From the IMG/VR virus record IMGVR_UViG_3300042891_000711, positions 154,903 to 218,902 of that record: DNA of 64,000 nucleotides; one strand, given 5' to 3'. Of this stretch, positions 1-20,680 are shown piece by piece. The notes beneath the pieces are model-generated. The model was not told the origin of the DNA, did no database searches, and was given only the letters and a program-made list of their open reading frames with translations. Both the position numbers and the translations under genes were made by a program. How positions within the stretch are numbered: position 1 is the stretch's first letter; every line of letters begins with the position of its first letter.

Positions 1-1526
1 TGTATCATTTCTTTCTGCCAGGGTTCTGGTTGCCAGCTAAAGTCAAAGCGGGCATAATCACATAGACTGCTGATTATCCATACGTGTTCTGTTGAGGCAG
101 TTGCCATAATACGTTTAAAGGTATCAAGGTAGTTGTCAACATATCGAGTCGATTTAATATCGGGGTGTTTCTTTTGTAGTTGCTCAAGTTGATCATTATC
201 ATTGCCATGATCCACAAAGTAAATGTCATGCAGGTCGTCTGGTATTATAATACTTTGATCTTGTACAAAGTTTAGGTTTGGAAATTCTTCTAAGCTGTTA
301 GCCCATGCGGATGTACGTTCAAATTCCCAACGATTAATTAAATAGGTATCACTCCACTTTTGATGTTGTGAACCAAATACATGTGTCATGTAACTTTGCC
401 ACGGTTCAGCATGCCATGCAAAGTTAAAGTCATCGTAGACGTTTTCACTACTGATAACCCAAAACTTACTGGTCTTTGCTCGTGCTACACAACGACGAAT
501 TGTGTCAATCATTGAATTAACATAGCGTACTCGTTGTACCTGTGGATACTGTTCAACTAATTTTTCATAACGTGCGGCCGAACTAGCATTGCTCCGGTCA
601 ATAAAGAATATATCTAATACTTGTATCACCGGGTTATCGTGTTGTCCTATAGTAGGAATATCTCCAGCAAACTTAACTTCGGTTGCACCCGGCGCAGTAT
701 AGGTCAGTCCGATACTAGATTGAAACTCTGAGCCAAAATGATAGATGTAGGGAGGATCCTGCGGATGCGGCACCCATCCAAAGTCTACAGTATCTGCATT
801 GACTTCTTCTGGTATAGTCCATAAGGTACGATCAGGTAAGGTACGTGCTACCACTACATCAATATATTTTTCTTGTGTAGCACCCGGTACGTGATATTCA
901 GGACCGCCCACTGCATTCCACACTGTAGGGAATTTATATATATAGGGTTCTTCTGCTGGGTGTGGTACCCAACTAAAGTCAAATGATTCTTTGTCTATAT
1001 TAGCAGGTACCTGCCAACGACTCATGTCACTGAGTGTGCGAGCAAAGAAATCATCTACAAACTTAACAGCAGTTGCACCAGGTACACGATATTCTGGACC
1101 ACCAATACGCTCCCATCCCCACTTAACAGGGAACTGATATACGTATGGTGGATCCAATGGATCAGGTGCCCATCTTTGATCAATACTGGCGGGATCTATG
1201 TTATCAGGTACATGCCAATAGTCTAAATTAGGCAGACGATGTGTGTATGTTTCTTTATGGTAGTTGTGTACTTTATCTTGTACAGTATACTTGTTAGCAA
1301 AGTAGGTGCCACCATCCTGTTGCCATTGGTTTGCCCACGTATGTATTTGATGCTGTTCCCAAGGCACTGCACGGAAATTAAAATCAAATCCTGTGTAGTC
1401 ATTCTGTCCATCTATGTACCAAAAGAATTTAGTGCGACTTAGTTCAGCCGCTTTGGCTAGTGTATCGGCCGGCAGTTCAAAAGGAAATAAGTTGGGCTTA
1501 GGGCCCTTATAGAATACATCAAACAT
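1..1526 (-). CDS. Large repeat protein with degenerate glycosyltransferase (GT-A)-like domains; runs off the window edge (3' truncated)
   Basis: Not in the ORF track. Manual translation from ATG at 1526 is open to base 1 (MFDVFYKGPKPNLFPFEL...). It has three ~66-aa W.VP..I...DF.W.PHP..PPYIY.FP...GGPEY.VPGAT repeats, then two domains (DIFFID...TSKFWVISS...FNFAWHAEPWQ; DIYFVD...TEHVWIISS...FDFSWQPEPWQ) resembling the N-terminus of the 15038..15934 protein. It overlaps the dCMP deaminase stop by 8 nt. Confidence 0.8.
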   Translation of the reverse strand, partial: MFDVFYKGPKPNLFPFELPADTLAKAAELSRTKFFWYIDGQNDYTGFDFNFRAVPWEQHQIHTWANQWQQDGGTYFANKYTVQDKVHNYHKETYTHRLPNLDYWHVPDNIDPASIDQRWAPDPLDPPYVYQFPVKWGWERIGGPEYRVPGATAVKFVDDFFARTLSDMSRWQVPANIDKESFDFSWVPHPAEEPYIYKFPTVWNAVGGPEYHVPGATQEKYIDVVVARTLPDRTLWTIPEEVNADTVDFGWVPHPQDPPYIYHFGSEFQSSIGLTYTAPGATEVKFAGDIPTIGQHDNPVIQVLDIFFIDRSNASSAARYEKLVEQYPQVQRVRYVNSMIDTIRRCVARAKTSKFWVISSENVYDDFNFAWHAEPWQSYMTHVFGSQHQKWSDTYLINRWEFERTSAWANSLEEFPNLNFVQDQSIIIPDDLHDIYFVDHGNDNDQLEQLQKKHPDIKSTRYVDNYLDTFKRIMATASTEHVWIISSLCDYARFDFSWQPEPWQKEMI

Positions 1527-1941
1527 CTAACTGTTCTACTTCCACTCCCGAAGCCTTAAGGAAATTGACTCCACTATCATCGCGATAACTAGTAGCGTAG
1601 TAAACTCGTTTGATACCACTTTGGTATATGAGCTTGGCACAATCCAAACAAGGACTATGAGTAACAAATAAGTCAGCATCAAGTCCAGACTCAGTGCTCC
1701 TGGCTAGTTTTGCAAGTGCGTTAGTTTCAGCATGTAGGACTTCCGGTTTAGTTTTAATCGTGCCATCGTCAAGTTCATACTCGCAGTTATTATCCCAACC
1801 AGTAGGCATACCATTGTAGCCAATTGAAATAATTCTGTCGTCTTTAACTACTAGTGCACCAACTTTAAGTCTACGTGCTGTGCTTAGATCACTGTAGAGA
1901 TGTGCAGCTCGCATGTGTGCTAGTTTATATTTTGTTTTCAT
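1519..1941 (-). CDS. cd: dCMP deaminase
   Basis: Motifs VGAL..KDDRIISIGYNG, HAE.NA and PC..CAKLI.QSGI. The start at 1941 (MKTKYK) forms an ATGA overlap with the upstream gene. Confidence 0.93.
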   Translation of the reverse strand: MKTKYKLAHMRAAHLYSDLSTARRLKVGALVVKDDRIISIGYNGMPTGWDNNCEYELDDGTIKTKPEVLHAETNALAKLARSTESGLDADLFVTHSPCLDCAKLIYQSGIKRVYYATSYRDDSGVNFLKASGVEVEQLDV

Positions 1942-2372
1942 TCTAGTATCCAAACTAAATCAGCCAAGGTCTTACTCCATTGATCAATATCATCAAATGT
2001 AGTAATACGGAAATCATATTCTTCAATGGACAAAGGTTCAAACAATTGATTAGTATCTTCGTAACGACCAGACCGAATAGTATCCATCCAAACCACTAGA
2101 TCAGCATCAAATATTTTTCTCAGTTCCCGTGTGGGACAGACAAAATCGCATATGGCAATTATATCTCGTTGCTCAATTGCAGTTGCGATATGTCGCATGC
2201 GATGTGCTTGTCGTAGTCTACCTTCACTGGTAAAATCCCAATCGTTGGTGGCCTGTCGGACTTCGTCGGCATTAACCCACTCTACAGCAAAGTTATTGGC
2301 TATTTCTTCTGTTAACCGTTCAGCTAACGTAGTTTTACCTGAGCCGGGTAGGCCACAAATTAAGATTTTCAT
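1938..2372 (-). CDS. Adenylylsulfate (APS) kinase-like P-loop kinase, short form
   Basis: MKILICGLPGSGKTTLA, NADEVR, DFTSEGR.RQ and ICDFVCP match the CysC pattern. The start is placed at 2372, 7 nt after a TATAAT box. Confidence 0.75.
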   Translation of the reverse strand: MKILICGLPGSGKTTLAERLTEEIANNFAVEWVNADEVRQATNDWDFTSEGRLRQAHRMRHIATAIEQRDIIAICDFVCPTRELRKIFDADLVVWMDTIRSGRYEDTNQLFEPLSIEEYDFRITTFDDIDQWSKTLADLVWILE

Positions 2373-2379
2373 ATTAGTT

Positions 2380-2408
2380 ATTATACAACCATTTTTAATG
2401 TACGTCAA
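2380..2408 (-). promoter_or_regulatory. Sigma70-type promoter for the APS kinase / dCMP deaminase / GT-repeat genes (probably leaderless)
   Basis: Minus strand reads TTGACG-N17-TATAAT, then 7 nt to the ATG at 2372. Confidence 0.75.
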
Positions 2409-2437
2409 GTATTTAATATCATGTAGCTGCCCCAAAT

Positions 2438-2445
2438 AATAAATA
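2438..2445 (+). promoter_or_regulatory. T4-type late promoter (AATAAATA) for the sulfotransferase-like gene
   Basis: TAAATA core 5 nt upstream of ATG 2451. Confidence 0.55.
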
Positions 2446-2450
2446 CAAGC

Positions 2451-3692
2451 ATGAATGTACTAATTCTTACACCCGACAGAGTTGGGTCAACCCTGCTACA
2501 AAGATTGCTTACCGTGTATATGTTAAGAAAAGGGTTTGATAAACCAGTAATTAACCTACATGAGTTAACCAACGGACTAGTACAATATTACAATACTACC
2601 ATAAATCAAACTGTTCTGGGTAAACCCGAAGGTCAAGACTGGGGATACCATCAATCCTTGTCCGAAGTTATTGAATTGCTATCTTCAACAGACCATTATA
2701 AAACTAGTAGACTAGCACACTATCATATTGTTAATAGACAGGATTCTATTGCCGAACAATTAAAGTTTTATGATTATCTCAATAAGAATTTTTATATAAT
2801 CAGCTGTCGTAGAGAAAATCTATTGGAGCATGCACTAAGCTGGTCAATTAATGCGCATAGTAAAAAATTAAATGTATACAGTCCACACGAAAAGATTAAT
2901 TCATTTTATGATATCTATCGTAACGGTATAGAAGTTCAACGAGATACTATGTATGCTCATTTAAAAAAATATAAAGAATATATCGATTGGTCTGACAGAT
3001 ATTTTAACATACAGTCACATTTTTATTATGAAAATGATGTGCCTAAGATTGAAGATTATATTTTAAATTTAGATTTTATGCAAGGGCACGCCAACAACTC
3101 CTGGCAGGATATGTTTGGGCAAAGCTTCGTCGACTATAATACCTGTCACAAACTTATTCCAGATTTATTGTTGTCTAATAATGTTACTGCCGATACAACA
3201 AAAATCAGTCGTCCACAGTGGGCGTGGAATTCTGAGTCGCTTAATGAATTAAATTGGAATACTGTTAAAGGGAAAGATTGGCCAGAGTACGATGATGTAA
3301 CTGTTGAATCATTTAATAAACTGCCAGCACCTATACAATCAGAACTTACTGAATTTGGCTATAACCCAAACAAGTATTCAGTATCAGTTACTGCTGATGT
3401 TTACAATTTTTTAAACCAGCATGTTGCACAGTATAAAGACACAGATGACCAACTGAACAAACTAGTACAAGATGGATTCTTAGTAACAGGCATTCCAATT
3501 AAACTACAGTCGTTCAGTGAAAAGAAATCTATTGTTAGAAACTTTAACGAATGTGTCGATTGGTATAATGAGTGGACTGTGGATAATTCCTATGGAAAGA
3601 AATATTCTGCGGAAGACATAAGTCAATTATGCATCATTGAAGATACTCGATTGACATTGCCTTTAGTGACTGTTAGTAAATTACTTTCATAA
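2451..3692 (+). CDS. Sulfotransferase-like protein (P-loop/Stf0-like)
   Basis: N-terminal ILTPDRVGSTLL (5'-PSB-like RxGST) and IISCRRENLLEHALSW (3'-PB-like R...S); adjacent to the APS kinase. Confidence 0.6.
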   Translation: MNVLILTPDRVGSTLLQRLLTVYMLRKGFDKPVINLHELTNGLVQYYNTTINQTVLGKPEGQDWGYHQSLSEVIELLSSTDHYKTSRLAHYHIVNRQDSIAEQLKFYDYLNKNFYIISCRRENLLEHALSWSINAHSKKLNVYSPHEKINSFYDIYRNGIEVQRDTMYAHLKKYKEYIDWSDRYFNIQSHFYYENDVPKIEDYILNLDFMQGHANNSWQDMFGQSFVDYNTCHKLIPDLLLSNNVTADTTKISRPQWAWNSESLNELNWNTVKGKDWPEYDDVTVESFNKLPAPIQSELTEFGYNPNKYSVSVTADVYNFLNQHVAQYKDTDDQLNKLVQDGFLVTGIPIKLQSFSEKKSIVRNFNECVDWYNEWTVDNSYGKKYSAEDISQLCIIEDTRLTLPLVTVSKLLS

Positions 3693-4521
3693 GGTCTGAC
3701 ACAAAATTAGTTGCAGTAGCTTTGTCATAATGGTGACCATCTCTTGCTAGATCAACCTGTGTCAACTGAATAATATTATTACGAATTGCCGAATCGGTTA
3801 GATGTATGTACTCGTAGTAATCATTATAAAAATCATACGTACTTAACTCTTCTTTAATGTTCACAGGAAGGGAATCAAATTCTAGTTTTGTGCGAGGTGC
3901 AGTGGGCCATGTATCTCCACTAAGTTTTTTCCATTTAATATTGAAAAATTCTTCATTTTCTATACGGTACGCACCAGGAATCATTGAATGAATTAATTTA
4001 GTAGTGGTTACAGCGGTATTAACGGCATCTAAATTTTTATCAAAATTATGTAAATAAACTTTATTATCTAAATCAGTATATGCCAGGCGGCGATTCTCGT
4101 CAATCTTAGTGTCATCTGTGTCTTCAGCTCGTTCAACATAAGTCCACTGGATAATTATACATCGAGGAGTTATAGTTTCTAACAAGCGTAGTACTTTTCT
4201 TGCGATCCAATCATTGCTGGCGCCGTCCATACTAACATTAATACACCGAATGTTAGTTTTATTTTGTAATATGTTTACCCAAGTATGCTCTAATGGGCTA
4301 CCCAATCCTACTGTAAAACTATCACCAAAGCACCATATTGCATCGGTTATGTTATCGGGCCATTCACTGTCTCTGAATCCTCGAGAATTGTAATTGTATT
4401 CAATGGCATAAGGATAAGAATTAAAATGATGTTTATCCGTGCAATATTTCTCAGAATCTATACCAGATTCATTCCATACTTTATGTTGTCTGGTAGTTAA
4501 TATAAAATCTGGTAGTATCAA
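3673..4521 (-). CDS. SGNH/GDSL-fold protein (esterase or acyltransferase)
   Basis: Block I CFGDSFTVG, block II GASN, and C-terminal DGHH (DxxH). Confidence 0.7.
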   Translation of the reverse strand: MILPDFILTTRQHKVWNESGIDSEKYCTDKHHFNSYPYAIEYNYNSRGFRDSEWPDNITDAIWCFGDSFTVGLGSPLEHTWVNILQNKTNIRCINVSMDGASNDWIARKVLRLLETITPRCIIIQWTYVERAEDTDDTKIDENRRLAYTDLDNKVYLHNFDKNLDAVNTAVTTTKLIHSMIPGAYRIENEEFFNIKWKKLSGDTWPTAPRTKLEFDSLPVNIKEELSTYDFYNDYYEYIHLTDSAIRNNIIQLTQVDLARDGHHYDKATATNFVSDLMKVIY

Positions 4522-6008
4522 GATAAAACTCGAATTCCGTATAACTGCTCAAAGCGGTCAGCATCTGCACGATCGTTAACCATCGGTTCACCACGTACAT
4601 TTAAACTTGTATTAAGTAACATAGGACAACCTGTCCAAGTATACCACAAGCACAATAGTTCACGTATACCACTGCCATCTCTGGGCACAGTCTGTACACG
4701 ACTTGTACCATCTACATGTATTATAGCAGGAAATTCATCGGGTCGCAGGCACTTTGCAGTTGTTTGCATGTATCTGCTTGTGGCAAATCCGTTGGGCATT
4801 TCAAAATACTCATCAACAAACTCCTCTAGTATTATAGGAGCGAATGGTCTAAACTTCTGTCTACGTTTAATTTGATTAACTGCATCTTTAATGTCAGGGC
4901 CACGTGGGTCGGCTAATAAACTACGATTGCCCAATGCTCTAGGGCCAAACTCTGCACGGCCGCTAGCAACGCCAACGATCTTATTGGTCATTAGCTCAGA
5001 GACAACATCGGTGACAGGATAACTGCCACTAATATTATGGCCAAGAAAAGCATTATTCCAATTAAGTTTACCCCCGTGTGCCAATGCCGCCGCTCCAAGG
5101 CTGCTACCAGCATCACCAGGATTAGGCATAATCCATATTTCATCAAAGTATTCTCCTAGATCTCTATTAGCACTGCAATTAAGAGCAACTCCGCCAGCAT
5201 ATACTAAATTACTATTAGGTGCTAGCTTCTTTGCCTTGTACATAATATTATGTATCAATTGTTCTGTTAATGTCTGTGCCGCATTAGCAATTTCAAAATC
5301 ATTCCAACGAGCTCGCATGTCATTATCGGGTAGACCAATATGTAGATTGTGTTTTAATGTTAGATTAAACTCATGGTCAACTAACCAAGTTGACAGTTGA
5401 TCACTTAGACGTGTGGTATTTTGTTTTGCCCAACCTGCCATACCCATCAAGATGTATTCTTCATCTAGTGGTTTAAGTCCAACTTCTTTAGTAAATGCAC
5501 TGTACATCAAGCCGATGCTGTGTGGATATAGTTGTCGCCATACTCGGGTGTATTCAGCACGGCCATTGACATACTTAGCTGACCATATGCTTATGGTGTC
5601 CCACTCGCCGATGGCATCGATTACCACAACTGTTGCGCTGTCAAACGGGCTAGTTTGAAAGCCGGCCGCTGCATGACTTAAATGATGATTGTATGTATTA
5701 ATCGGAGTAGAACTCAACCACGGAGCGACTTTGTGTATCATGTTGCGCACACTCCAGCCTTTAGTTAGTTCGCTGTACTGGCCAGCATAGAGTTGACGTG
5801 TCTTTTTAACCCAGGGTCTTTCGTAGTAGGCAATTAGATCAGGTTCGCCATGATTAAATATGCAATCTTTAAACAGTTCACTGTTTAAATTTGGATCGTG
5901 TTTAATCTTGCTGTAACGTTCAGCATGGCCCGCAAAGACAATGTCATCGCCTTTGATTAATGTAATTGCTGCGTCATGAAACCCAGCCGAGATGCCTAAT
6001 ATGTTCAT
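4518..6008 (-). CDS. O-carbamoyltransferase (NodU/CmcH/TobZ family)
   Basis: GISAGFHDAA, ERYSKIKH, HHLSHAA, DAIGE, GGVALNC, GDAGSSLGAA, EFGPRALGNRS, RPFAP, HVDGTSRVQTV and LLNTSLNVRGEP. Confidence 0.95.
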   Translation of the reverse strand: MNILGISAGFHDAAITLIKGDDIVFAGHAERYSKIKHDPNLNSELFKDCIFNHGEPDLIAYYERPWVKKTRQLYAGQYSELTKGWSVRNMIHKVAPWLSSTPINTYNHHLSHAAAGFQTSPFDSATVVVIDAIGEWDTISIWSAKYVNGRAEYTRVWRQLYPHSIGLMYSAFTKEVGLKPLDEEYILMGMAGWAKQNTTRLSDQLSTWLVDHEFNLTLKHNLHIGLPDNDMRARWNDFEIANAAQTLTEQLIHNIMYKAKKLAPNSNLVYAGGVALNCSANRDLGEYFDEIWIMPNPGDAGSSLGAAALAHGGKLNWNNAFLGHNISGSYPVTDVVSELMTNKIVGVASGRAEFGPRALGNRSLLADPRGPDIKDAVNQIKRRQKFRPFAPIILEEFVDEYFEMPNGFATSRYMQTTAKCLRPDEFPAIIHVDGTSRVQTVPRDGSGIRELLCLWYTWTGCPMLLNTSLNVRGEPMVNDRADADRFEQLYGIRVLS

Positions 6009-6522
6009 TGATTACTTCCGCTATTCGTTGATGCCCTAGTTCCAGTGGATGTCCACCCGGTCCTTTTGGACAATCACCCATCCATTCTACTATGCCTTGG
6101 TTTGGCCAGCCTAGCCAACATGATAATCCTGTGTCAGTTGCTTGTTGTTGTATATCAAAGGTACTTACAAACACGTGTGGTATATTGTGTAAATAGGCAT
6201 CTAATAACTTAGTCTGTACTATAAATTTTTTATAAGCCCATGCAGTGTCCCAGTCAGCAAATACACTATTGACTACAGGACCATATTTTTTATAACTAGC
6301 CGATGTTAAATGTTTGCCAGGCAATTCAATACGGTTAGGACTAGTCCATGCTACGATTACATAATCAACTGAATGTGTGTCGACATAGTCAACTGTTGAT
6401 CTAAGTATGTAATCATTACTAGCACCAGGAACACTAATGTTTACAGTGCCACTGATTAAATCAGGCCATGCAACTTCGCTTTCTTCACCTGCGGTAAAAC
6501 TATCGCCATTGACTAAAATCAT
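5974..6522 (-). CDS. SGNH-fold protein
   Basis: NGDSFTAG, GASN, WTSPNR and GGHPLELGH. Confidence 0.7.
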   Translation of the reverse strand: MILVNGDSFTAGEESEVAWPDLISGTVNISVPGASNDYILRSTVDYVDTHSVDYVIVAWTSPNRIELPGKHLTSASYKKYGPVVNSVFADWDTAWAYKKFIVQTKLLDAYLHNIPHVFVSTFDIQQQATDTGLSCWLGWPNQGIVEWMGDCPKGPGGHPLELGHQRIAEVINEHIRHLGWVS

Positions 6523-6620
6523 TTATAGATAAAAGGATCGCGTTTACGTAATTCTTTTAATTTTTTACGATAGTTTATTTCTAATCGAATTCTACTGTAT
6601 AAATTCTTTAACCAGTTCAT
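6519..6620 (-). CDS. 33-aa basic peptide MNWLKNLYSRIRLEINYRKKLKELRKRDPFIYK
   Basis: Below the ORF-track cutoff. It bridges the gap between two SGNH genes, and its TGA overlaps the ATG of the next gene (ATGA at 6519-6522). Confidence 0.75.
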   Translation of the reverse strand: MNWLKNLYSRIRLEINYRKKLKELRKRDPFIYK

Positions 6621-7419: not shown

Positions 7420-7420
7420 C

Positions 7421-12312: not shown

Positions 12313-13661
12313 AAGGTGTCGTACCAGTTAGTTAATTGTGTAAATGTATATTTAAAGTCTTTGCCTCGACGTTGGTCGTATTGCTGATAAAATTGTTTAA
12401 AATCGTTTTGTAATTTAGGCAAATCAAATGCTTCAGCATGCGGAATATCTACCATGGTCAAATATTCAATTAGTCGTTTAATGTGCTCAAATTCGTGCTC
12501 ATGAAATACTGTATTCTTATTATTGTTAGCTAAAAAAGTTTCAAGTTCTAAACTATATTTTTTACGTAGTTCTAAGGGTAATATTAAAGGGCTTTGGAAA
12601 CTTGGAAAGCGCAGAATATTTAGAGTAAACGACAATGAATCACGTCCGTATTTCTCTTTGAGTTTCATTATATTGTACAAAAATTCACTGAGGCTTGATA
12701 AACACAGGGCATTGATTGTGCCCATGATATGCACGCCGCGCACCTGTTTGGATTCTAATAGAAATACTAAATTTTTGACCCATTGTTTCCATTCTAATCC
12801 ATCACGTATATACTCTGCTTGTGCGCCCATAGCTTCGTTACTGGTGTAGATATCAAGTTCGATACCCTGTGTGCTATCCAGCAAGCGTTCGAGTACATCA
12901 CGTTTAAAGCCAAGATTACTATTGATAGCTAGGCGTGTAGTACTGGCACCTTTATGTTCTTTAAACCAATCTATTAGACGCCATGTATAACCCGACATCA
13001 AGGGTTCACCACCTGTGATGCGCAGTTCTTTTAACGTCTTGTGTAGGTCTGTTTCCCACCACTTAAAGAACGCTTCCACATAAGGATTAACTTCATTGAG
13101 TGTGTAAAGTTGACTACTATCATGAACATGAGTAAAGTGATTCCTACCGTCTGATACCAAGTTTGTGTAAGCACCATTTGTTTTAATATCTCTGACCCAG
13201 GCGCTACTAAAAGCAGGATTGCAGTAACTACAAGCAAATTGACAAGTACGGTCAAAAGAAATTTCCAATGTCTGCAGATCCACGTCTTGGTCCGCGGGTA
13301 AATTATATGCATAATCTAAATCCTCATCTTTATAAATTACAGTTTTGTACACACGGTCACTGACTGCCGCTGTGCCCATGTCTTCAATCTTCCAGCAGTA
13401 TTCACAGCCCGCGGGTCGTTCACCTTGTTGCATCATACGACGTTCTTCTTTCTTACGTATGCTGTTGTGCAGGGCTTTGGGATTAGCAGCAATATCCTCA
13501 AGTGACACTTTGTGCGGTAGTGGATGATGACAGCTAGTAGTCATACCCGAACCCAACCATATAGTAGCATTGTACCACTTGGCCGCACAGAATGATTCTG
13601 ACTTAATGTCAATTACTCTACGCTTGTATTCTAAGTCTGTTTCGTTATTAATTTTCGGCAT
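12309..13661 (-). CDS. Radical SAM protein with N-terminal twitch domain (SCHHP subtype)
   Basis: CAAKW..SCHHP..CEYC, core CQFACSYC and GGEP. Confidence 0.9.
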   Translation of the reverse strand: MPKINNETDLEYKRRVIDIKSESFCAAKWYNATIWLGSGMTTSCHHPLPHKVSLEDIAANPKALHNSIRKKEERRMMQQGERPAGCEYCWKIEDMGTAAVSDRVYKTVIYKDEDLDYAYNLPADQDVDLQTLEISFDRTCQFACSYCNPAFSSAWVRDIKTNGAYTNLVSDGRNHFTHVHDSSQLYTLNEVNPYVEAFFKWWETDLHKTLKELRITGGEPLMSGYTWRLIDWFKEHKGASTTRLAINSNLGFKRDVLERLLDSTQGIELDIYTSNEAMGAQAEYIRDGLEWKQWVKNLVFLLESKQVRGVHIMGTINALCLSSLSEFLYNIMKLKEKYGRDSLSFTLNILRFPSFQSPLILPLELRKKYSLELETFLANNNKNTVFHEHEFEHIKRLIEYLTMVDIPHAEAFDLPKLQNDFKQFYQQYDQRRGKDFKYTFTQLTNWYDTL

Positions 13662-15045
13662 GATATTTGCATTCGTTCCAAAATTCTCGCATCTGTGGGA
13701 ATATGTCTGTAAAATGTCCTATGTCAGTTTCGTATGCGCCGCGACGTTTATCGTATTCGCTAAAGAATCGATAGAAGTCCGCACGTTGTAGTGTAACATA
13801 CTTTGCATCTAACTTGCTACCATCTCGCATCCAAAGTAAGTTGCGTTCCATACGCTGTATTTCATAATCTTTAAAGCCAACAAAACTATCGTTGGGCATT
13901 AGGTTAGCCCGCATAAATGCTATAACATCTTCTAATACTGTCTGGTAACTTGCTGGAAGTATCTGTAAACTTTGCCAAGTTGGACTACGTAGTAAAGGTG
14001 TATCAAACCAAACACGTTGATAAGTTTCGCTATACAATTCACGTTGATCTAATACAGTCTGCAATAATTGTTTTAGTCCTAAAATATTTAAATTACTCAT
14101 CGTGATGATATAGGTTAGGCTATTGCGATAAGGTATATGTGTAAGATAACGATGTACATATGAATTTACTCTATGTTGATTTAAACCACGACGAATATAC
14201 TCCGACTGTCTGGTGTCACCCGAATCTAAACTAACATACTGCATAAAGTGTTCGATGCGTTCACCTTCGCATAGCTGTTTTACTTTGTCTAGATACTTGT
14301 CAAACAGTTCAGGCTCGACACTAAAGTTACTGGTTACATCAACGTGCAAGTCACTCTTAGGCAAGGCAAGTATGTAGTCAAACACACGATGCGTATTCTT
14401 ATCCATAAGTGGTTCGCCACCTGTCATACGGAAGTGTTTTAGTTTAGGATATAGTTCAGGCCACCAAGACCAAAATGCATCTACATAAGGATTTTCTGCA
14501 CGTACTGGAATTGGCTTACGTCGACCTTCAAAATGTTCAGGCGCATTGTGCGGAGTACTAGTTGGATATGCTCCCCATCGGTCAATATCTGTACCCCACT
14601 TAGTACTGTACTGCGGACTGCAATAGCTACATGCCAAATTACAGCCATGACTGAAGTTTACTTCTACATAACTTGGCGTAACGTCCTGATCCCAAGGTGC
14701 ATTAACTATAGTTTCGTAGTGTTCAGCAGCCCATGGTTCGCCACTGCGATAATGCCTATCGCTTAGTTGCTGGTTATCTTCTGCACTCCAACAGTAGCTG
14801 CATTCTGCCGGACGTGTTTGCTCTAGCATAAGTTTACGTTGCTGTTTCTTATAGTCAGTATTGTGTAAGGCACTGGGATTGAATAGTAATGGTGCGCTAT
14901 CAATTTCATGTAAAGGCGGATGATAACAACTGTTAGTTAAGCCCGTTGGTAAATGTAGACTTACCTGTTGCCACTTAGCCAAGCAGAGTGCCGGACCTAA
15001 CTTGTCCTTCATTTCTTCTGCGGCAGACATGAAATTACTACTCAC
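13648..15045 (-). CDS. Radical SAM protein with N-terminal twitch domain (SCYHP subtype)
   Basis: CLAKW..SCYHP..CSYC, core CNLACSYC and GGEP. The start is probably GTG 15045 (overlapping the upstream stop) or ATG 15030. Confidence 0.88.
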   Translation of the reverse strand: MSSNFMSAAEEMKDKLGPALCLAKWQQVSLHLPTGLTNSCYHPPLHEIDSAPLLFNPSALHNTDYKKQQRKLMLEQTRPAECSYCWSAEDNQQLSDRHYRSGEPWAAEHYETIVNAPWDQDVTPSYVEVNFSHGCNLACSYCSPQYSTKWGTDIDRWGAYPTSTPHNAPEHFEGRRKPIPVRAENPYVDAFWSWWPELYPKLKHFRMTGGEPLMDKNTHRVFDYILALPKSDLHVDVTSNFSVEPELFDKYLDKVKQLCEGERIEHFMQYVSLDSGDTRQSEYIRRGLNQHRVNSYVHRYLTHIPYRNSLTYIITMSNLNILGLKQLLQTVLDQRELYSETYQRVWFDTPLLRSPTWQSLQILPASYQTVLEDVIAFMRANLMPNDSFVGFKDYEIQRMERNLLWMRDGSKLDAKYVTLQRADFYRFFSEYDKRRGAYETDIGHFTDIFPQMREFWNECKYHAEN

Positions 15046-15934
15046 GTGACATTGGGCCTCGGTTTTTAAACACACTTTTGTAGTGATGTTTAAAGAATCT
15101 ACTTTGATCAGCTGTGAAATGTGGAGCAGGTAATCCTAGTTTTACGCTTAATGTATGTGACATTTCACTACATTCTTCTACTAGATTATATACTTTATGT
15201 TGATGCCATATATTGTTTAGTGCATCGAAGTCCTGCACTTCTCTATAATCCCAATCTGTAATCATAGTCATGTATGTGCCTAGTTTAGCACCGTACATGG
15301 CCCAGTCACCGTTCTCTACATCTATGCCCACATTGTGCCATATGCTTAGATGATCATAGTTACGTTCGTGTACACGTTTTTCAAATTCTTGTAGTGTAGG
15401 TTTGGCACCACGATCCAAACACATCTTAACACCTTCTCTAAAGCCAGCTCGCCATGCTTGATAAGGACTTTGATTTGGATATGTTGTGCTGTAGCAATCA
15501 TTCATTGCCCAATATCGTGGATCAAAACAAAACTCAACTGCGGTATCATCTGCACCATCGCTGGCTTCGTGTGTACGCATATTGTTTACAAAATCCTTGG
15601 TCCAGCAACTCATACCACCATTGCCGTACATAAGTCCGTTGATAATGTTACGTGCTTTCCAACGGAATACTACATCTCGATTAGTATCATCCAGTGTAAG
15701 CTGTAGGTTAAAGAACTCTGGATCGGGTAAGTTATCACCATCTATTAATACAAAGCGTTCAGTATCACTTGCGGCGGCCGCGGCTTTATGTGCAGCATCA
15801 CTGCCCTTGACACCGTCTACTCGTTTAGCCCACGGCACCATGTTTTGAATTTTAATCCAAAACTCTTCTTTTTTAGGTTCATCGTAACTTAGGTAGATGC
15901 AGTCTAAATCTGCAATATCAACGATTTGTGTCAT
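15038..15934 (-). CDS. Glycosyltransferase-like protein (GT-A fold)
   Basis: DCIYLSYDEP...AHKAAA...FVLIDGDN (DxD), YGNGG and WRAGFREGVK. Confidence 0.6.
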   Translation of the reverse strand: MTQIVDIADLDCIYLSYDEPKKEEFWIKIQNMVPWAKRVDGVKGSDAAHKAAAAASDTERFVLIDGDNLPDPEFFNLQLTLDDTNRDVVFRWKARNIINGLMYGNGGMSCWTKDFVNNMRTHEASDGADDTAVEFCFDPRYWAMNDCYSTTYPNQSPYQAWRAGFREGVKMCLDRGAKPTLQEFEKRVHERNYDHLSIWHNVGIDVENGDWAMYGAKLGTYMTMITDWDYREVQDFDALNNIWHQHKVYNLVEECSEMSHTLSVKLGLPAPHFTADQSRFFKHHYKSVFKNRGPMSRE

Positions 15935-16268
15935 AGTATTCTATATCCTGGTAGGTGTCAGTTGATTCTATTATTAGTCCTGCATGTTTCTTTACAGTAG
16001 CGTAGCCTGTGATACTACTAGTTAATTGTACACGATAACCCGGGTTGTTGTCAATCTTTTTTAGACGGCAGTCTACAATTGTATAGCGGAAATAATTCTC
16101 ATATTCATCTTGACTAACAACAACATACTGCGTATCTGCTGGGTGGTTCATCATTGTACACATTGTAATGATTCCAAGTTCATTGTAGTGTAATCTATAT
16201 TCTTTAACTTCTTCTACAGTAGGTTTGAGCATTGCCAATGCTTTTTCAAATTCACTTAAAGAGTTCAT
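15918..16268 (-). CDS. Hypothetical protein
   Basis: ~116-aa ORF overlapping both neighbours in the operon. Confidence 0.6.
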   Translation of the reverse strand: MNSLSEFEKALAMLKPTVEEVKEYRLHYNELGIITMCTMMNHPADTQYVVVSQDEYENYFRYTIVDCRLKKIDNNPGYRVQLTSSITGYATVKKHAGLIIESTDTYQDIEYYDTNR

Positions 16269-17109
16269 GTTCATACTCCTTGACTAATTGATCCGTTACC
16301 CAAGACTTTTCATGATAGTGAACGGGGTGATATTGATTGGTGTTTGCTATGCGTATCATTGGCAGTTCTGTTTCACACATGACTAACTCGGGCCAGGGTG
16401 TACTAGTCCATGCATTAATTGCTGGCTTCATATGCACAAAATTAATAAAGTCTAGGCTAGGTAGTGTACAATCTTCTACACCAAGTAACTTTGCAGCTAG
16501 AGCATAGACAACATCAGTAGTGGGATTATCATCACGGCAGTTAAGTAATACATTGTCACGTATGTAGGCCCAATTTTTAAATATTTGTTCTGCTAAGGCA
16601 AAGAATTGCGTAGCTTCACGACTGTATCTAAAATACATTAGCCCATTGTAGGTATCGGGCAATTCATTATCGTCAAATAACTTTCTGTATTCTCGTGATA
16701 CGCTTAACTCCTGCTGATAGTTTCTACAGCCGGTGCTTAGTACAACATTTTTTAATCTAAAAGCAGTCCACCAATGTGCAATACTTCTAGTGAATACAAT
16801 GTCACTTTCAAGTTTAATTGTTTCTTTGAATGGAGTGAGATAAAATGCCTGCCATTCATTTGATAACTTCCATGTTTCGTTTTCAGCTAGGTCATTCTCA
16901 ATAGTAACAACATAATCAAACACCCGTCGATGTTGTTCTGTTATCTGTTCAAGTGTATGTTTATCAACTGCTACTGCGTATAAACTATCAGGCATGGTCA
17001 GTTTAATACTCATTGCTTGCACGTAAGCAAGCTGTAAGTAATCAACCTCTGTGGTATTCTGCGCAATGGTCATAAAACCCTGCTGTGCTTGATGTGGTGT
17101 TATGCGCAT
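16252..17109 (-). CDS. Nucleotide-diphospho-sugar transferase-like protein (GT-A; ESD in place of DxD)
   Basis: TPFKETIKLESD, YNGLMYF, TTDVVYALA and FVHMK; paralog of 17100..17876. Confidence 0.6.
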   Translation of the reverse strand: MRITPHQAQQGFMTIAQNTTEVDYLQLAYVQAMSIKLTMPDSLYAVAVDKHTLEQITEQHRRVFDYVVTIENDLAENETWKLSNEWQAFYLTPFKETIKLESDIVFTRSIAHWWTAFRLKNVVLSTGCRNYQQELSVSREYRKLFDDNELPDTYNGLMYFRYSREATQFFALAEQIFKNWAYIRDNVLLNCRDDNPTTDVVYALAAKLLGVEDCTLPSLDFINFVHMKPAINAWTSTPWPELVMCETELPMIRIANTNQYHPVHYHEKSWVTDQLVKEYEHELFK

Positions 17110-17876
17110 ACTGTATCTACCAACTGATTAAAATTTTCACTAAGCAAATAATCTTTATCCATCACGTGTATGTTTTGCAGGGCAATGACATGTGCAGAAT
17201 TTTCTTCGCGTATAATCATCTTTTCGCCCGTTATTTCAATGTTTTTAATTAGTTTATCCAGGGTTAACATAGTCCAAGGTATACTTTGTGTGGTGTTAGT
17301 AGTGTACCCATTAATGATGTTGTTAGCAATAGCAAACGCATAATCATTGCGGAAATTACGTTCTCTTAAGTGATATAGTTTTTGATAGTAAGCATAGTTA
17401 CGTTCAATACGACCAACTAAATCAAATAACATTTGTGTTTTATCTGTACGCTTAAATGTTATAGCAGTTGCCCATACATAATCTAAACTTAACTGACCCA
17501 TGTTGCCCGACATTGACTGTTCAGGGCTTTGATTATTGTGCATTAACTTATAATCAACTGTTGTATCAAGTATAGTTAATAAACTTGAGTCTAACTGTAG
17601 ATAGTCACTGTCAAGTAAGATAGTTTCGTCATAAGGGCTAAGTTCGTATGCACGATATCTACCACCATTCTTCCATTCTGTACCACCAGCATAGCCAGTG
17701 CGATAGTTAGCTAAACTAGGTACGCCCAGATCTGTGATAATGGTAGTAGGTAAGTTTAATGTATGTTTTATTAGTCGTGCGGCTTGCTCAGCGATTCTAA
17801 CATAATCAACTGTGGCAGTGTTAACAGCAAATAGTACAACACCTTTAGACTTTGCGGGCACGTCGAATTTCTTCAT
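17100..17876 (-). CDS. Nucleotide-diphospho-sugar transferase-like protein (GT-A)
   Basis: SPYDETILLDSDY (DxD), WATAITF, FRNDYAFAIA and HVMDK. Confidence 0.65.
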   Translation of the reverse strand: MKKFDVPAKSKGVVLFAVNTATVDYVRIAEQAARLIKHTLNLPTTIITDLGVPSLANYRTGYAGGTEWKNGGRYRAYELSPYDETILLDSDYLQLDSSLLTILDTTVDYKLMHNNQSPEQSMSGNMGQLSLDYVWATAITFKRTDKTQMLFDLVGRIERNYAYYQKLYHLRERNFRNDYAFAIANNIINGYTTNTTQSIPWTMLTLDKLIKNIEITGEKMIIREENSAHVIALQNIHVMDKDYLLSENFNQLVDTVCA

Positions 17877-18162
17877 ATTGAATATGCCATGCGTTCATTA
17901 CTTGTTGATAGTGTTGCTGACACAATTCTAAAAATGCTAGTCGTTGTATTTCTATAGGATTTTCGTAGGTATCTTCAAGATATAGTGTATCAGCAGTCCA
18001 AGTTGATAGGAATGCTATAAGTTCCGGTGTTACTTTAAAGAGTCCATTGTTATACGGAACATGTAAGTCCGTTTGTATTTTTTCTTTAAGTATGCGTTTG
18101 TTGGTTTGATAATCCGTTGCTTGTTTAATTTGAGCAACTAGTTGAGTAATTTCTGTTGTCAT
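17845..18162 (-). CDS. Hypothetical protein, first gene of the modification operon (possible tail-fibre-assembly-like fold)
   Basis: The start MTTEIT at 18162 lies downstream of the promoter/terminator junction. The helical protein contains YNNGLFKVTPELIAF...LEDTYENPIEI. Confidence 0.55.
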   Translation of the reverse strand: MTTEITQLVAQIKQATDYQTNKRILKEKIQTDLHVPYNNGLFKVTPELIAFLSTWTADTLYLEDTYENPIEIQRLAFLELCQQHYQQVMNAWHIQYEEIRRARKV

Positions 18163-18178
18163 AATAGTAATTAGCCAT

Positions 18179-18209
18179 AAAAATAGGTAAGTCAAAATAA
18201 CTTACCTAT
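18179..18209 (-). terminator. Intrinsic terminator after the last tail-fibre gene
   Basis: Perfect 10-bp inverted repeat ATAGGTAAGT (18183-92) / ACTTACCTAT (18200-09), followed by a T run on the minus strand. Confidence 0.7.
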
Positions 18210-18238
18210 AGTATAAGACATTTGTATTAAGTTGTCAA
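18210..18238 (-). promoter_or_regulatory. Consensus sigma70 promoter driving the GT/radical SAM operon
   Basis: Minus strand reads TTGACA (18238-33) - N17 - TATACT (18215-10). Confidence 0.8.
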
Positions 18239-19180: not shown

Positions 19181-19190
19181 TCTTTATTCC

Positions 19191-20648: not shown

Positions 20649-20680
20649 TGTTTTTACCTATTATATATTATTTATCTGTT

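What the first reader, a model, noticed from the sequence alone, without database searches (positions are those of the whole stretch)
1..18238. Phage-encoded ~18-kb glycan-building and tailoring cluster next to the tail fibres (GTs, five rSAM domains, three SGNH, carbamoyltransferase, sulfotransferase, APS kinase)
Seen: 14 minus-strand ORFs from 18162 to 3673 overlap or abut like one operon, in the order adaptor-like ORF, GT, GT, small ORF, GT, four rSAM genes, unknown, SGNH, peptide, SGNH, carbamoyltransferase, SGNH. These are followed by a sulfotransferase-like gene, an APS kinase and a GT-repeat protein. Established: NodU-type enzymes O-carbamoylate sugars; twitch rSAMs such as BtrN oxidise sugar C-H bonds; SGNH proteins add or remove O-acyl groups on glycans; APS kinase makes PAPS for sulfotransferases. 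Inference: this is a complete pathway for a heavily decorated (oxidised, acylated, carbamoylated, sulfated) glycan. Its most likely target is the virion (fibres or baseplate), given the position. The alternative is DNA hypermodification, since phage carbamoyltransferases acting on 5hmC are known and a dCMP deaminase is embedded here. I know of no characterised phage pathway with this enzyme set.
Basis: partly seen in the sequence, partly recalled or inferred. Interest (0 to 1): 0.9.

Follow-up and report, generated by a model that had tools for sequence, protein, structure and literature searches.

The report
Phage peptide-plus-glycan tailoring gene cluster
A large group of uncultured giant phages carries a conserved ~18-kb block of enzyme genes built around a tiny, almost invariant 33-residue peptide; it most likely makes a sugar-decorated, chemically tailored peptide product, which has not been described for phages.

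Summary
Window 1-18238 holds an operon-like minus-strand chain in a T4-like jumbo myovirus, and about 70 of 80 related viral contigs keep the same gene order.

Verified parts:
- five N-terminal-twitch radical-SAM domains (NCBIfam NF033640);
- a NodU/TobZ-type carbamoyltransferase;
- three SGNH-like proteins (DUF6071-like);
- three GT-A-like proteins (weak but consistent evidence);
- an APS-kinase-like P-loop kinase;
- a dCMP deaminase.

The "sulfotransferase" has no support and is accessory.

New findings:
It lies upstream of the carbamoyltransferase in 59 of 59 loci. It also occurs, unannotated, in Ralstonia phage RsoM2USA and in a marine virus.
- A terminator and its own promoter separate the cluster from the tail-fibre genes.
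- NDP-aminosugar genes lie just beyond the window.
- The neighbouring thymidylate synthase is canonical (Asn177), which weakens the 5hmC DNA-modification reading.

Best reading (confidence about 0.4): a RiPP-like or mycofactocin-like pathway that tailors and glycosylates this peptide. Rivals are virion-protein glycosylation, DNA hypermodification and host-surface glycan remodelling. The product and its target are unknown.

The parts
18183..18238 (-). Transcription-unit boundary: TTGACA-17-TATACT promoter-like site, then a 12-bp hairpin and a T run
   Evidence: 11 of 12 match; the strongest terminator-like site in 1-20000. The same gap in 47 distinct relatives holds a terminator hairpin followed by a -10-like element.
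17845..18162 (-). Small conserved protein (about 105 aa), function unknown; first gene of the unit
   Evidence: Present in 68 of 81 loci. No Pfam, PHROG or PDB match. Also in RsoM2USA locus A.
17100..17876 (-). GT8-like (GT-A) glycosyltransferase-like protein, paralogue of 16252-17109
   Evidence: hhalign against the 16252 family: 98.3%, E 1e-14. Invariant D89-x-D91.
16252..17109 (-). GT8-like glycosyltransferase-like protein
   Evidence: The ortholog profile hits glycogenin-1 at E 8e-4 over residues 4-112. Invariant E101-x-D103. Weak Pfam Mannosyl_trans3 hit at 0.031.
15918..16274 (-). Small conserved protein (118 aa), function unknown
   Evidence: Present in 46 of 81 loci. No informative match.
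15038..15934 (-). Most conserved non-radical-SAM enzyme: a new GT-A-fold protein with invariant D65-G-D67
   Evidence: Alignment with 74% mean column identity. AF2 model pLDDT 87.8. All top Foldseek PDB hits are GT-A glycosyltransferases (WrtF, SunS/ThuS, RmlT, TarS; E from 3e-4, TM 0.30-0.39).
13648..15075 (-). N-terminal-twitch radical SAM enzyme (paralogue 1)
   Evidence: NF033640 at 2e-81. Four twitch Cys plus CxxxCxxC plus GGEP.
12309..13661 (-). N-terminal-twitch radical SAM enzyme (paralogue 2); its ortholog sits beside the peptide in RsoM2USA
   Evidence: NF033640 at 2e-87. 51% identical to RsoM2USA_202.
9757..12312 (-). Fusion of two N-terminal-twitch radical SAM enzymes (paralogues 3 and 4); two separate genes in most relatives
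   Evidence: NF033640 at 9e-216 with two stretches. Two separate hits in most loci.
8481..9770 (-). N-terminal-twitch radical SAM enzyme (paralogue 5)
   Evidence: NF033640 at 3e-86.
7421..8506 (-). Conserved 361-aa protein with a phage-only fold, function unknown
   Evidence: AF2 pLDDT 88.1. No PDB fold match. BFVD matches only uncharacterised phage proteins, including one from Atu_ph07.
6592..7419 (-). SGNH-like hydrolase or acyltransferase (DUF6071-like)
   Evidence: Invariant Ser9, Gly, Asn62 and His. Best PDB profile hit is a GDSL lipolytic protein at 0.0035. RsoM2USA-type homologues carry PF19547.
6519..6620 (-). 33-aa peptide gene (with stop codon); C-terminus ...YRKKLKELRKRDPFIYK nearly invariant; proposed substrate or scaffold
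   Evidence: 56 DNA variants with a synonymous-site pattern. GGGAG Shine-Dalgarno site and ATGA stop/start overlap with the next gene. 59 of 59 co-occurrence with the carbamoyltransferase. 1395 homologues and 220 clusters at 50% identity.
5974..6522 (-). SGNH-like protein (DUF6071-like), translationally coupled to the peptide
   Evidence: (DUF6071, 0.007).
4518..6008 (-). NodU/CmcH/TobZ-type carbamoyltransferase
   Evidence: Pfam Carbam_trans_N at 3e-38 and Carbam_trans_C at 1e-47. NodU model at 1e-42 but far below its cut-off. 47% identical to RsoM2USA_199.
3673..4521 (-). Accessory SGNH-like protein (few relatives have it)
   Evidence: hhalign to the SGNH-like family: 97%, E 8.5e-11. Pfam GDSL_2 at 0.0095. 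Found in 4-7 loci.
2451..3692 (+).
   Evidence: No Pfam, NCBIfam, PHROG or PDB support. Present in 4 loci.
2380..2408 (-). Second sigma-70-like promoter site (TTGACG-17-TATAAT), just upstream of the kinase start
   Evidence: 11 of 12.
1938..2372 (-). APS-kinase-like P-loop kinase (about 144 aa from the ATG at 2372); substrate unknown
   Evidence: Pfam APS_kinase at 1e-11 over profile positions 3-90 of 152. NCBIfam hits are below their cut-offs. Orthologs are 133-155 aa.
1519..1953 (-). dCMP deaminase, probably ordinary dTMP supply
   Evidence: Pfam at 3e-22. Canonical ThyA and DHFR lie nearby in the same phage.
1..1526 (-). N-terminal 508 aa of an 872-aa protein made of degenerate 15038-like (GT-A-like) modules and three 'PYIY' repeats; last gene of the chain
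   Evidence: Its C-terminal domain is homologous to 15038-15934 (98%, E 1.6e-13).

Best explanation
The region is a separately transcribed biosynthetic gene cluster. It is conserved across a large clade of uncultured T4-like jumbo myoviruses and is built around a ribosomally made 33-aa peptide: a basic helix followed by an invariant C-terminal DPFIY(K).

Proposed mechanism:
1. The peptide is the substrate or scaffold.
2. The five N-terminal-twitch radical SAM enzymes carry out radical chemistry on it, for example cross-linking, epimerisation or decarboxylation-type steps around the aromatic C-terminus.
3. The NodU/TobZ-type enzyme O- or N-carbamoylates it via carbamoyl-AMP.
4. The SGNH-like proteins add or remove acyl groups, or cleave the peptide.
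5. The three GT-A-like proteins, plus the multi-module 872-aa protein, attach sugars supplied in part by the adjacent phage NDP-aminosugar genes.

The product would be a tailored glycopeptide or a peptide-derived glycosylated small molecule (RiPP-like; closest analogy mycofactocin).

Shown: the gene content, the protein families, the reality and conservation of the peptide gene, its co-occurrence with the enzymes, and the transcription-unit boundary.

Inferred: that the peptide is the substrate, which residue is modified, the order of steps, and the role of the product.
For: Peptide gene:
- It is under strong purifying selection. 56 DNA versions exist, third-position entropy is 40 against 20 and 14 at positions 1 and 2, and D-P-F-I-Y is invariant with up to 6 synonymous codons per residue.
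- It has a Shine-Dalgarno site and an ATGA overlap with the next gene.
- It lies 23-1623 nt upstream of the carbamoyltransferase in 59 of 59 loci.
- It occurs in an unannotated gap of RsoM2USA, between DUF6071 genes and next to a radical SAM and the carbamoyltransferase. It also occurs in marine virus AG-345-D19 in the same company.
- Across 220 clusters at 50% identity the N-terminus varies while the C-terminal ~20 residues stay fixed, and the match almost always ends at the protein's C-terminus.

Radical SAM enzymes:
- All five domains belong to NF033640, with a 4-Cys twitch plus CxxxCxxC.
- Elusimicrobia members are fused to 500-650 aa of TPR repeats, which are protein/peptide-binding modules.
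- A Bacteriovoracaceae genome keeps 8 in tandem, orthologous to the phage paralogues, with no GT or carbamoyltransferase. The radical SAM set therefore works as a unit independent of sugar genes.

Glycosyltransferase evidence.

NDP-sugar aminotransferase and dehydratase genes adjacent to the cluster, conserved in relatives.

Precedent: mycofactocin combines a C-terminal Val-Tyr peptide, a radical SAM enzyme and the GT MftF (PMC7491314).
Against: - No RRE/PqqD-like peptide-binding domain, leader peptidase or exporter was detected.
- True bacterial N-twitch radical SAM loci lack this peptide.
- Twitch radical SAMs such as BtrN act on sugars (established knowledge), so the radical SAMs could tailor sugars instead.
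- RsoM2USA splits the system. The GT-like genes plus one radical SAM sit beside fibre genes, and the peptide, SGNH-like genes, carbamoyltransferase and one radical SAM sit 93 kb away among DNA-metabolism genes. The two halves might be separate pathways.
- An invariant 'core' is atypical for antibiotic RiPPs.
- The GT assignments rest on weak scores (E about 1e-3 to 1e-4, TM 0.3-0.39).
Confidence: 0.4

Rival explanations
1. Virion-protein glycosylation. The GT-A-like enzymes build a glycan on tail fibres or the baseplate. The radical SAMs, SGNH-like proteins and carbamoyltransferase tailor the sugars. The peptide is an accessory factor (primer, chaperone or regulator).
For: - The cluster always follows the fibre genes. 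In RsoM2USA the GT-like half also stays beside a fibre-type gene.
- NDP-aminosugar genes are adjacent.
- GT-A folds are supported.
- Two bacterial N-twitch radical SAM neighbourhoods contain Peptidase_S74 fibre-chaperone domains.
- Precedents from my own knowledge: mycobacteriophage capsid and tail glycosylation, and Mimivirus and chlorovirus glycan machinery.
Against: - A terminator plus an own promoter separate the cluster from the fibre genes in this phage and its relatives.
- This reading does not explain the ultra-conserved peptide or its strict link to the carbamoyltransferase.
- It does not explain the radical SAM arrays without GTs in bacteria.
- There is no direct evidence for any glycosylated virion protein.
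Confidence: 0.25
2. DNA hypermodification. The carbamoyltransferase acts on 5-hydroxymethylpyrimidine in DNA or dNTPs, as the known 5hmC carbamoyltransferase does. The GT-A-like enzymes glycosylate bases, and the kinase and deaminase feed the pathway.
For: - A phage carbamoyltransferase of the same Pfam families makes 5-carbamoyloxymethyl-C and co-occurs with dCMP deaminase domains (PMC8670742).
- Phage GT-A enzymes that glycosylate 5hmC are known (bioRxiv 10.1101/2023.12.21.572611).
- Here the deaminase and a P-loop kinase follow the carbamoyltransferase.
- In RsoM2USA the peptide/carbamoyltransferase locus lies among DNA ligase, DHFR and helicase genes.
- The promoters are sigma-70-like rather than the late type.
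Against: - The thymidylate-synthase homologue next to the cluster has Asn177, the catalytic PPCH Cys, a canonical C-terminus and an adjacent DHFR. It is therefore ThyA, not a dCMP hydroxymethylase.
- No TET/5mYOX, C5-methyltransferase, PRA-PH or second TS was seen in the about 84 kb examined.
- In the cited study, carbamoyltransferases on unmodified contigs are flanked by GTs.
- Five radical SAMs and the peptide have no role in any known DNA pathway.
Confidence: 0.12
3. Host-envelope remodelling. The enzymes alter host LPS, capsule or another surface glycan during infection, for example to block superinfection or help release.
For: - The enzyme families (GT8, GT2-like, SGNH, NodU-type, DegT, 4,6-dehydratase) are typical of O-antigen, capsule and Nod-factor tailoring (established knowledge).
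- The promoters are host-type.
Against: - No flippase, polymerase, lipid-carrier transferase or membrane protein was found in the cluster.
- The cluster is a conserved core of a lytic-type jumbo phage clade with very high enzyme conservation (65-80%), which is unusual for host-specific surface modification.
- The peptide is unexplained.
Confidence: 0.08

Closest known systems
Mycofactocin pathway (MftA peptide, radical SAM/SPASM MftC, GT2 glycosyltransferase MftF)
   Same: A short ribosomal peptide whose conserved part is the extreme C-terminus, with an aliphatic residue followed by Tyr (Val-Tyr there, Ile-Tyr here). A radical SAM enzyme with auxiliary Fe-S clusters. A GT-A-fold enzyme that glycosylates the peptide-derived product (PMC7491314).
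   Different: No MftB-like RRE, MftE peptidase or MftD was found. Here there are five N-terminal-twitch radical SAMs rather than one C-terminal SPASM enzyme, plus a carbamoyltransferase and SGNH-like proteins. The system is encoded by a lytic-type phage. No sequence homology to MftA or MftC beyond the superfamily (MftC model at 1e-6, far below its cut-off).
Radical-SAM RiPP pathways in general (PQQ, streptide, darobactin, sactipeptides) and glycocins (SunA/SunS)
   Same: A small precursor gene embedded among radical SAM enzymes with auxiliary clusters. SunS and ThuS peptide glycosyltransferases are among the structural matches of 15038-15934.
   Different: The twitch domain is N-terminal. No RRE, protease or transporter is present. 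The core is invariant rather than variable. The peptide has no Cys.
Phage 5hmC carbamoyltransferase system (Yang et al. 2021, PMC8670742)
   Same: The same Pfam carbamoyltransferase architecture, with a dCMP deaminase close by.
   Different: The partner thymidylate-synthase homologue here is a canonical Asn177 ThyA. The enzyme is shorter (496 aa against about 63 kDa). It is always preceded by the 33-aa peptide.
Virus-encoded glycosylation of virions (mycobacteriophage capsid and tail glycosylation; Mimivirus and chlorovirus glycan machinery; my own knowledge)
   Same: Virus-encoded GT-A enzymes and NDP-aminosugar synthesis genes placed next to structural genes.
   Different: None of those systems includes radical SAM arrays, a carbamoyltransferase or a conserved small peptide. 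Here the cluster is a separate transcription unit.
Nod-factor tailoring set (NodU, NodH, NodPQ, NodL)
   Same: A NodU-family carbamoyltransferase together with an APS-kinase-like gene and acyl-modifying enzymes.
   Different: The NodU equivalog score is not reached (146.8 against a cut-off of 1000). No NodH-like sulfotransferase or NodC was detected. The kinase is truncated.
BtrN-type twitch radical SAM sugar dehydrogenases
   Same: A radical SAM core plus one auxiliary [4Fe-4S] 'twitch' cluster.
   Different: The twitch is N-terminal here. No solved homologue came closer than viperin or MoaA at E about 1e-6. The substrate is unknown.

Membership tests
NF033640 N-terminal-twitch radical SAM | Score above the curated cut-off (170 bits) over the full model | tested here: met
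   274-294 bits for the single-domain genes and 716.6 bits for the fusion.
NF033640 N-terminal-twitch radical SAM | CxxxCxxC radical SAM cluster motif plus four N-terminal Cys for the auxiliary cluster | tested here: met
   C46, C64, C106, C109, C160, C164 and C167 are invariant in all five domains, as is GGEP.
NodU/CmcH/TobZ carbamoyltransferase | Both Pfam domains (PF02543, PF16861) above gathering score | tested here: met
   132.4 and 162 bits against cut-offs of 24 and 27.
NodU (equivalog) | NCBIfam NF041651 cut-off of 1000 bits | tested here: not met
   146.8 bits. It is a family member but not NodU itself.
5hmC carbamoyltransferase DNA-modification system | Partner thymidylate-synthase homologue with Asp at E. 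coli position 177 (dCMP hydroxymethylase) | tested here: not met
   The neighbouring TS reads ...GVPFNIASY... (Asn) and has DHFR beside it. The rest of the genome was not searched.
5hmC carbamoyltransferase DNA-modification system | dCMP deaminase or MafB19-type deaminase within a few kb | tested here: met
   1519-1953 hits PF00383 and PF14437. This is also expected for ordinary dTMP synthesis.
RiPP biosynthetic cluster | A translated precursor peptide gene inside the cluster | tested here: met
RiPP biosynthetic cluster | A peptide-recognition element (RRE/PqqD-like) in or beside the modifying enzyme | tested here: not met
   No PqqD or RRE hit in Pfam, NCBIfam or PDB-profile searches of any cluster protein. 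Fold-level detection was not possible for the small proteins.
RiPP biosynthetic cluster | The modified peptide is detected | not testable with these tools
   Needs mass spectrometry.
GT-A fold glycosyltransferase (15038-15934) | Rossmann-like GT-A fold with a DxD metal/nucleotide motif | tested here: met
   All top Foldseek hits are GT-A enzymes (E from 3e-4; TM only 0.30-0.39). D65-G-D67 is invariant. No Pfam hit better than 0.057.
GT8 (16252-17109, 17100-17876) | Sequence-profile similarity to GT8 members and a DxD motif | tested here: inconclusive
   Glycogenin at E 8e-4, N-terminal 110 residues only. The paralogue has no PDB hit. DxD-like motifs are invariant.
SGNH/GDSL hydrolase | Conserved Ser (block I), Gly (II), Asn (III) and His (V) | tested here: met
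   S9, G59 (nearly invariant), N62 and H249/H255. Database scores are below cut-offs. Relatives are typed as DUF6071.
APS kinase | Full-length match, including the lid, and curated cut-offs reached | tested here: inconclusive
   Pfam 45.4 bits (above 21.1) but only positions 3-90 of 152. All NCBIfam APS-kinase models are below cut-off.
Sulfotransferase (2451-3692) | Any detectable similarity to a sulfotransferase family | tested here: not met
Phage virion glycosylation system | A glycan on a virion protein that depends on the phage GTs | not testable with these tools
   Only adjacency to fibre genes is seen, and transcription is separate.

The most novel reading that the evidence does not exclude
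A globally distributed clade of jumbo phages encodes, as a conserved core function, a RiPP-like pathway. It would convert a 33-aa peptide with an invariant DPFIY C-terminus into a glycosylated, carbamoylated peptide-derived molecule (cofactor-like or ligand-like, in the manner of mycofactocin or PQQ). If so, it would reveal the first substrate of the uncharacterised N-terminal-twitch radical SAM family.
Probability: 0.3. Interest if true: 0.9.

Novelty: new variant of a known kind. Interest (0 to 1): 0.78.

Why it matters
- The N-terminal-twitch radical SAM family (thousands of metagenomic members) has no known substrate. This cluster offers a concrete, testable candidate: a 33-aa peptide.
- A peptide-centred, multi-radical-SAM, glycosylating pathway that is core to a widespread lytic phage lineage would be a new kind of phage biochemistry. 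The product could act in virion function, host takeover or defence evasion.
- The work corrects the annotation of a cultured phage: RsoM2USA has an unannotated peptide gene.
- It shows that carbamoyltransferase plus deaminase adjacency alone should not be read as DNA modification.

Tried and rejected
- Nucleotide search against isolated phages: no match.
- PHROG scan of the unannotated proteins: nothing.
- PDB sequence-profile searches for 7421, 15038, 17100, 17845, 15918 and 2451: uninformative.
- Foldseek of 7421 against the PDB: no match, so the fold is unassigned.
It was repeated with three domains.
- Bacterial neighbourhoods of N-twitch radical SAMs: heterogeneous and not decisive.
- Search for conserved small ORFs beside bacterial radical SAMs: only frame artefacts of TPR repeats.
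- 2451-3692 as a paralogue of the 357-aa ORF outside the window: rejected (blastp E 0.3).
- Resemblance of the peptide's DPFIY to the 'PYIY' repeats of the 872-aa protein: judged probably structural coincidence, because the same strand reads IHVF or THVF in the other modules.
- Literature searches for this gene set, the N-terminal twitch or DUF6071: nothing.
- The RsoM2USA paper does not mention these genes.
- Considered from memory only and not pursued: the peptide as a mimic of the FtsZ or SSB C-terminal tail. The motifs do not match.

Full report
**What the window is.** The window comes from a T4-like jumbo myovirus. The evidence:
- The portal is about 50% identical to those of Agrobacterium phage Atu_ph07 and Pseudomonas phage PA5oct.
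- The window encodes a gp55-type late sigma factor, gp46/47-type nuclease subunits, and gp5, gp6 and gp25-type baseplate proteins.

No isolated phage matches at the DNA level. The same phage does occur in IMG/VR as contigs of 63 kb and 218.9 kb.

**Checking the observation.** From 18162 down to 3673, fifteen minus-strand ORFs overlap or abut, counting the small peptide ORF. Downstream of them lie a plus-strand ORF, a small kinase, a dCMP deaminase, and an ORF that leaves the window at its left end.

The family assignments held up to differing degrees:

| Gene(s) | Call | Evidence |
|---|---|---|
| 4518-6008 | Carbamoyltransferase, firm | |
| 13648-15075, 12309-13661, 9757-12312, 8481-9770 | Radical SAM genes, firm | Five domains (9757-12312 is a fusion), all NCBIfam NF033640 'twitch domain-containing radical SAM' at 1e-81 to 1e-216. 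Four N-terminal Cys, CxxxCxxC and GGEP are invariant across the five domains. |
| 1519-1953 | dCMP deaminase, firm | |
| 6592-7419, 5974-6522, 3673-4521 | One SGNH-like family | Invariant Ser, Gly, Asn and His. Weak GDSL hits. hhalign 97% for 3673. RsoM2USA-type homologues are typed as DUF6071. |
| 16252-17109, 17100-17876 | GT8-like paralogues | hhalign 98% between them. The profile touches glycogenin at E 8e-4. |
| 15038-15934 | GT-A fold | The best-conserved non-radical-SAM protein. Confident AF2 model, pLDDT 87.8. All top PDB neighbours are GT-A glycosyltransferases, though TM is only 0.30-0.39. D-G-D is invariant. |
| 7421-8506 | Phage-only fold, function unknown | Confident model (pLDDT 88.1) with no PDB match and only uncharacterised phage proteins in BFVD. 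|
| 1938-2372 | APS-kinase-like, but incomplete | Matches only the first 90 of 152 APS_kinase positions and misses every NCBIfam cut-off. Orthologs show the true start is the ATG at 2372. |
| 2451-3692 | 'Sulfotransferase' unsupported | No support in any library. |

**Conservation.** A scan of IMG/VR with one radical SAM found at least 597 relatives, of which 80 loci were kept. About 70 of them share this order:

fibre genes → 17845 → 17100 → 16252 → (15918) → 15038 → 13648 → 12309 → 9757N → 9757C → 8481 → 7421 → (SGNH-like genes, variable number) → carbamoyltransferase → kinase → deaminase → repeat protein.

The ORFs 2451 and 3673 occur in only a few loci. The radical SAMs and 15038 are 65-80% identical across phages whose fibre proteins are only 40-50% identical. 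The module is therefore a core feature of the clade, not a variable island.

**The overlooked element: the peptide.** The small ORF between 6592 and 5974 encodes a 33-aa peptide from its internal ATG (window 6620-6522, stop at 6521-6519).
- Its C-terminal part...YRKKLKELRKRDPFIYK, is almost invariant in every related locus that reaches that far.
- Among 56 distinct DNA versions, variation sits at third codon positions (summed entropy 40, against 20 and 14). W3, L21 and D-P-F-I-Y never change, although Leu uses six codons and Pro four.
- The gene has a GGGAG Shine-Dalgarno site, and its stop overlaps the next start as ATGA.
- It lies 23-1623 nt upstream of the carbamoyltransferase in 59 of 59 loci.
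- The large protein database holds 1395 homologues, nearly all called as 33 aa.
- A full HMM scan of 1.8 billion representatives finds 220 clusters. In these the N-terminus drifts, while the ~20 C-terminal residues and the terminal position of the motif are kept. The residue after Tyr can be K, H, D, E or absent.

**The peptide in other phage lineages.** Ralstonia phage RsoM2USA has the peptide (...IRKQDPFIYK) in an unannotated 108-nt gap between ORFs 201 and 200. RsoM2USA-like metagenomic contigs show the order DUF6071, radical SAM, DUF6071, peptide, DUF6071, carbamoyltransferase. Marine virus AG-345-D19 has ...KSDPYIYEE directly before its carbamoyltransferase, with SGNH-like genes and an N-twitch radical SAM alongside.

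RsoM2USA splits the system in two. The GT-like genes, the 17845-like gene, 15038-like genes and one radical SAM stay beside a fibre-type gene. The peptide half lies 93 kb away among DNA-metabolism genes.

**Surroundings.** The left-end ORF is 872 aa in the full contig. It consists of degenerate 15038-like modules plus three repeats, and its C-terminal domain is homologous to 15038 (98%) but lacks the DGD motif. It is the last gene of the chain.

Convergent on it are the following genes:
- a DegT/DnrJ/EryC1 sugar aminotransferase (1e-84);
- an NAD-dependent epimerase/4,6-dehydratase-type gene (2e-40);
- a thymidylate synthase and a DHFR.

This arrangement is conserved in relatives, some of which have two aminotransferase/epimerase pairs. 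The thymidylate synthase has Asn177, the PPCH cysteine and a canonical C-terminus. Together with the DHFR and the dCMP deaminase, it forms an ordinary dTMP route.

**Transcription.** TATAAATA is rare in the window: 4 copies against 11.6 expected. Three of the four sit 25-40 nt upstream of structural genes. (A/G)ATAAATA precedes other structural genes, including the fibre gene at 20648.

The only real gap in the chain is 18163-18238. It holds a TTGACA-17-TATACT site followed by a 12-bp hairpin and a T run. In 47 distinct relatives the equivalent gap holds a terminator hairpin followed by a -10-like element. A second 11-of-12 promoter-like site precedes the kinase. The cluster is therefore its own transcription unit. 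Adjacency to the fibre genes is conserved, but co-transcription is not.

**The radical SAM family elsewhere.** A scan of bacterial genomes found true cellular members at 35-43% identity. Contigs L082-L087 are phage contigs binned into MAGs and carry the whole module.
- The neighbourhoods are heterogeneous: other radical SAM/SPASM genes, PhyH, GT28, Peptidase_S74, GDSL, and single cases of carbamoyltransferase and sulfotransferase.
- Elusimicrobia members are fused to 500-650 aa of TPR repeats.
- One Bacteriovoracaceae chromosome carries eight in tandem, including orthologues (41-53%) of the phage paralogues, without GT, carbamoyltransferase or this peptide.

These points favour a protein or peptide substrate and a radical SAM set that acts as a unit. 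This is inference.

**Interpretation.** I favour a peptide-centred pathway at confidence 0.4. In it the 33-aa peptide is the substrate or scaffold. The radical SAMs modify it, the NodU/TobZ-type enzyme carbamoylates it, the SGNH-like proteins acylate, deacylate or cleave it, and the GT-A-like proteins glycosylate it with phage-made sugars.

The closest analogy is mycofactocin, which combines a C-terminal Val-Tyr peptide, a radical SAM enzyme and glycosylation by MftF (PMC7491314). Membership of that family is not claimed. No RRE, MftE or MftD was found, the twitch domain is N-terminal, and the scores against MftC are negligible.

The rivals:
- **Virion-protein glycosylation (0.25).** It fits the position and the sugar genes, but it leaves the peptide unexplained.
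- **DNA hypermodification (0.12).** It has a real precedent in the 5hmC carbamoyltransferase, which co-occurs with deaminase and TS domains (PMC8670742), and in DNA-glycosylating GT-A enzymes. The defining partner, an Asp177 TS homologue, was tested nearby and not found. The rest of the genome could not be searched.
- **Host-surface remodelling (0.08).** It lacks any membrane or lipid-carrier component.

**Limits.**
- The GT and SGNH assignments rest on weak database scores backed by motif conservation.
- Only about 84 kb of the phage genome was seen.
- Promoter calls are consensus matches. The total number of sigma-70-like sites is not above chance (62 against 71.6 expected). Only their placement in the two intergenic gaps and their conservation in relatives give them weight.
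- No product, target or timing has been observed.

Noticed in passing
L001:14026-14133 (MG752970.1, about 125894-126001, minus strand): Ralstonia phage RsoM2USA has an unannotated 36-aa gene ending in DPFIYK, in the gap between ORF201 and ORF200. It is homologous to the window's peptide.
   Followed up: yes
window 24394-37506 (-): A single 4370-aa ORF lies between the fibre genes and the gp6-like baseplate wedge. It is presumably a giant fibre or baseplate-associated protein and was not analysed.
   Followed up: no
window 53922-55557 (+): A second, unrelated radical SAM gene with a canonical C-terminal SPASM domain (54436-55557). It is preceded by a short SDR-like ORF (53922-54446), just after the gp46/47-type nuclease genes.
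   Followed up: partly
window 55805-56245 (+): A SegE-type GIY-YIG homing-endonuclease-like gene (Pfam 2e-36).
   Followed up: no
window 58012, 58036, 60687; 48263, 40948, 20676: Likely late promoters. TATAAATA is depleted overall (4 copies against 11.6 expected), but it sits 25-40 nt upstream of structural genes. (A/G)ATAAATA sits 28-31 nt upstream of other structural genes.
   Followed up: partly
L082-L087 (MAGs labelled Legionellales, Porticoccaceae, Flavobacterium, Haliscomenobacter, Rickettsiales): These 'bacterial' MAG contigs carry the whole phage module, including fibre genes and the peptide. They are most likely phage contigs mis-binned into MAGs.
   Followed up: partly
L102, L106 and sister contigs of Elusimicrobia MAG MJ-2014_bin-0981: Arrays of 4-7 tandem genes, each encoding a long TPR region fused to an N-twitch radical SAM domain. 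An asparagine-synthase-like gene lies nearby.
   Followed up: partly
L091:6040-18036 (Bacteriovoracaceae UBA6144): Eight N-twitch radical SAM genes in tandem on a bacterial chromosome, next to obg- and rsfS-type genes. They include orthologues of the phage paralogues, with no GT, carbamoyltransferase or DPFIY peptide.
   Followed up: partly
window 1-1526 (-) / L166:10001-12619: The 872-aa protein has three repeats containing D-P-P-Y-I-Y-(K/H/Q)-F, which resembles the peptide's D-P-F-I-Y-K. It is probably a structural strand of the module, but a shared recognition motif is not excluded.
   Followed up: partly
L014, L007, L021 and other loci, between orthologs of 15038, 13648, 12309 and 8481: Many relatives carry 1-5 kb inserts and extra, divergent (about 25% identical) radical SAM paralogues between the conserved genes. 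The inserts were not characterised.
   Followed up: no
window 19191-20648 (-): A tail-fibre protein with a C-terminal Peptidase_G2/IMC-type autoproteolytic chaperone domain. The fibre proteins 18239-22039 contain no cysteine.
   Followed up: no
P0241 (75 aa), L074:17582-18526: Some relatives have two copies of the peptide, either as two genes or fused in one ORF.
   Followed up: partly
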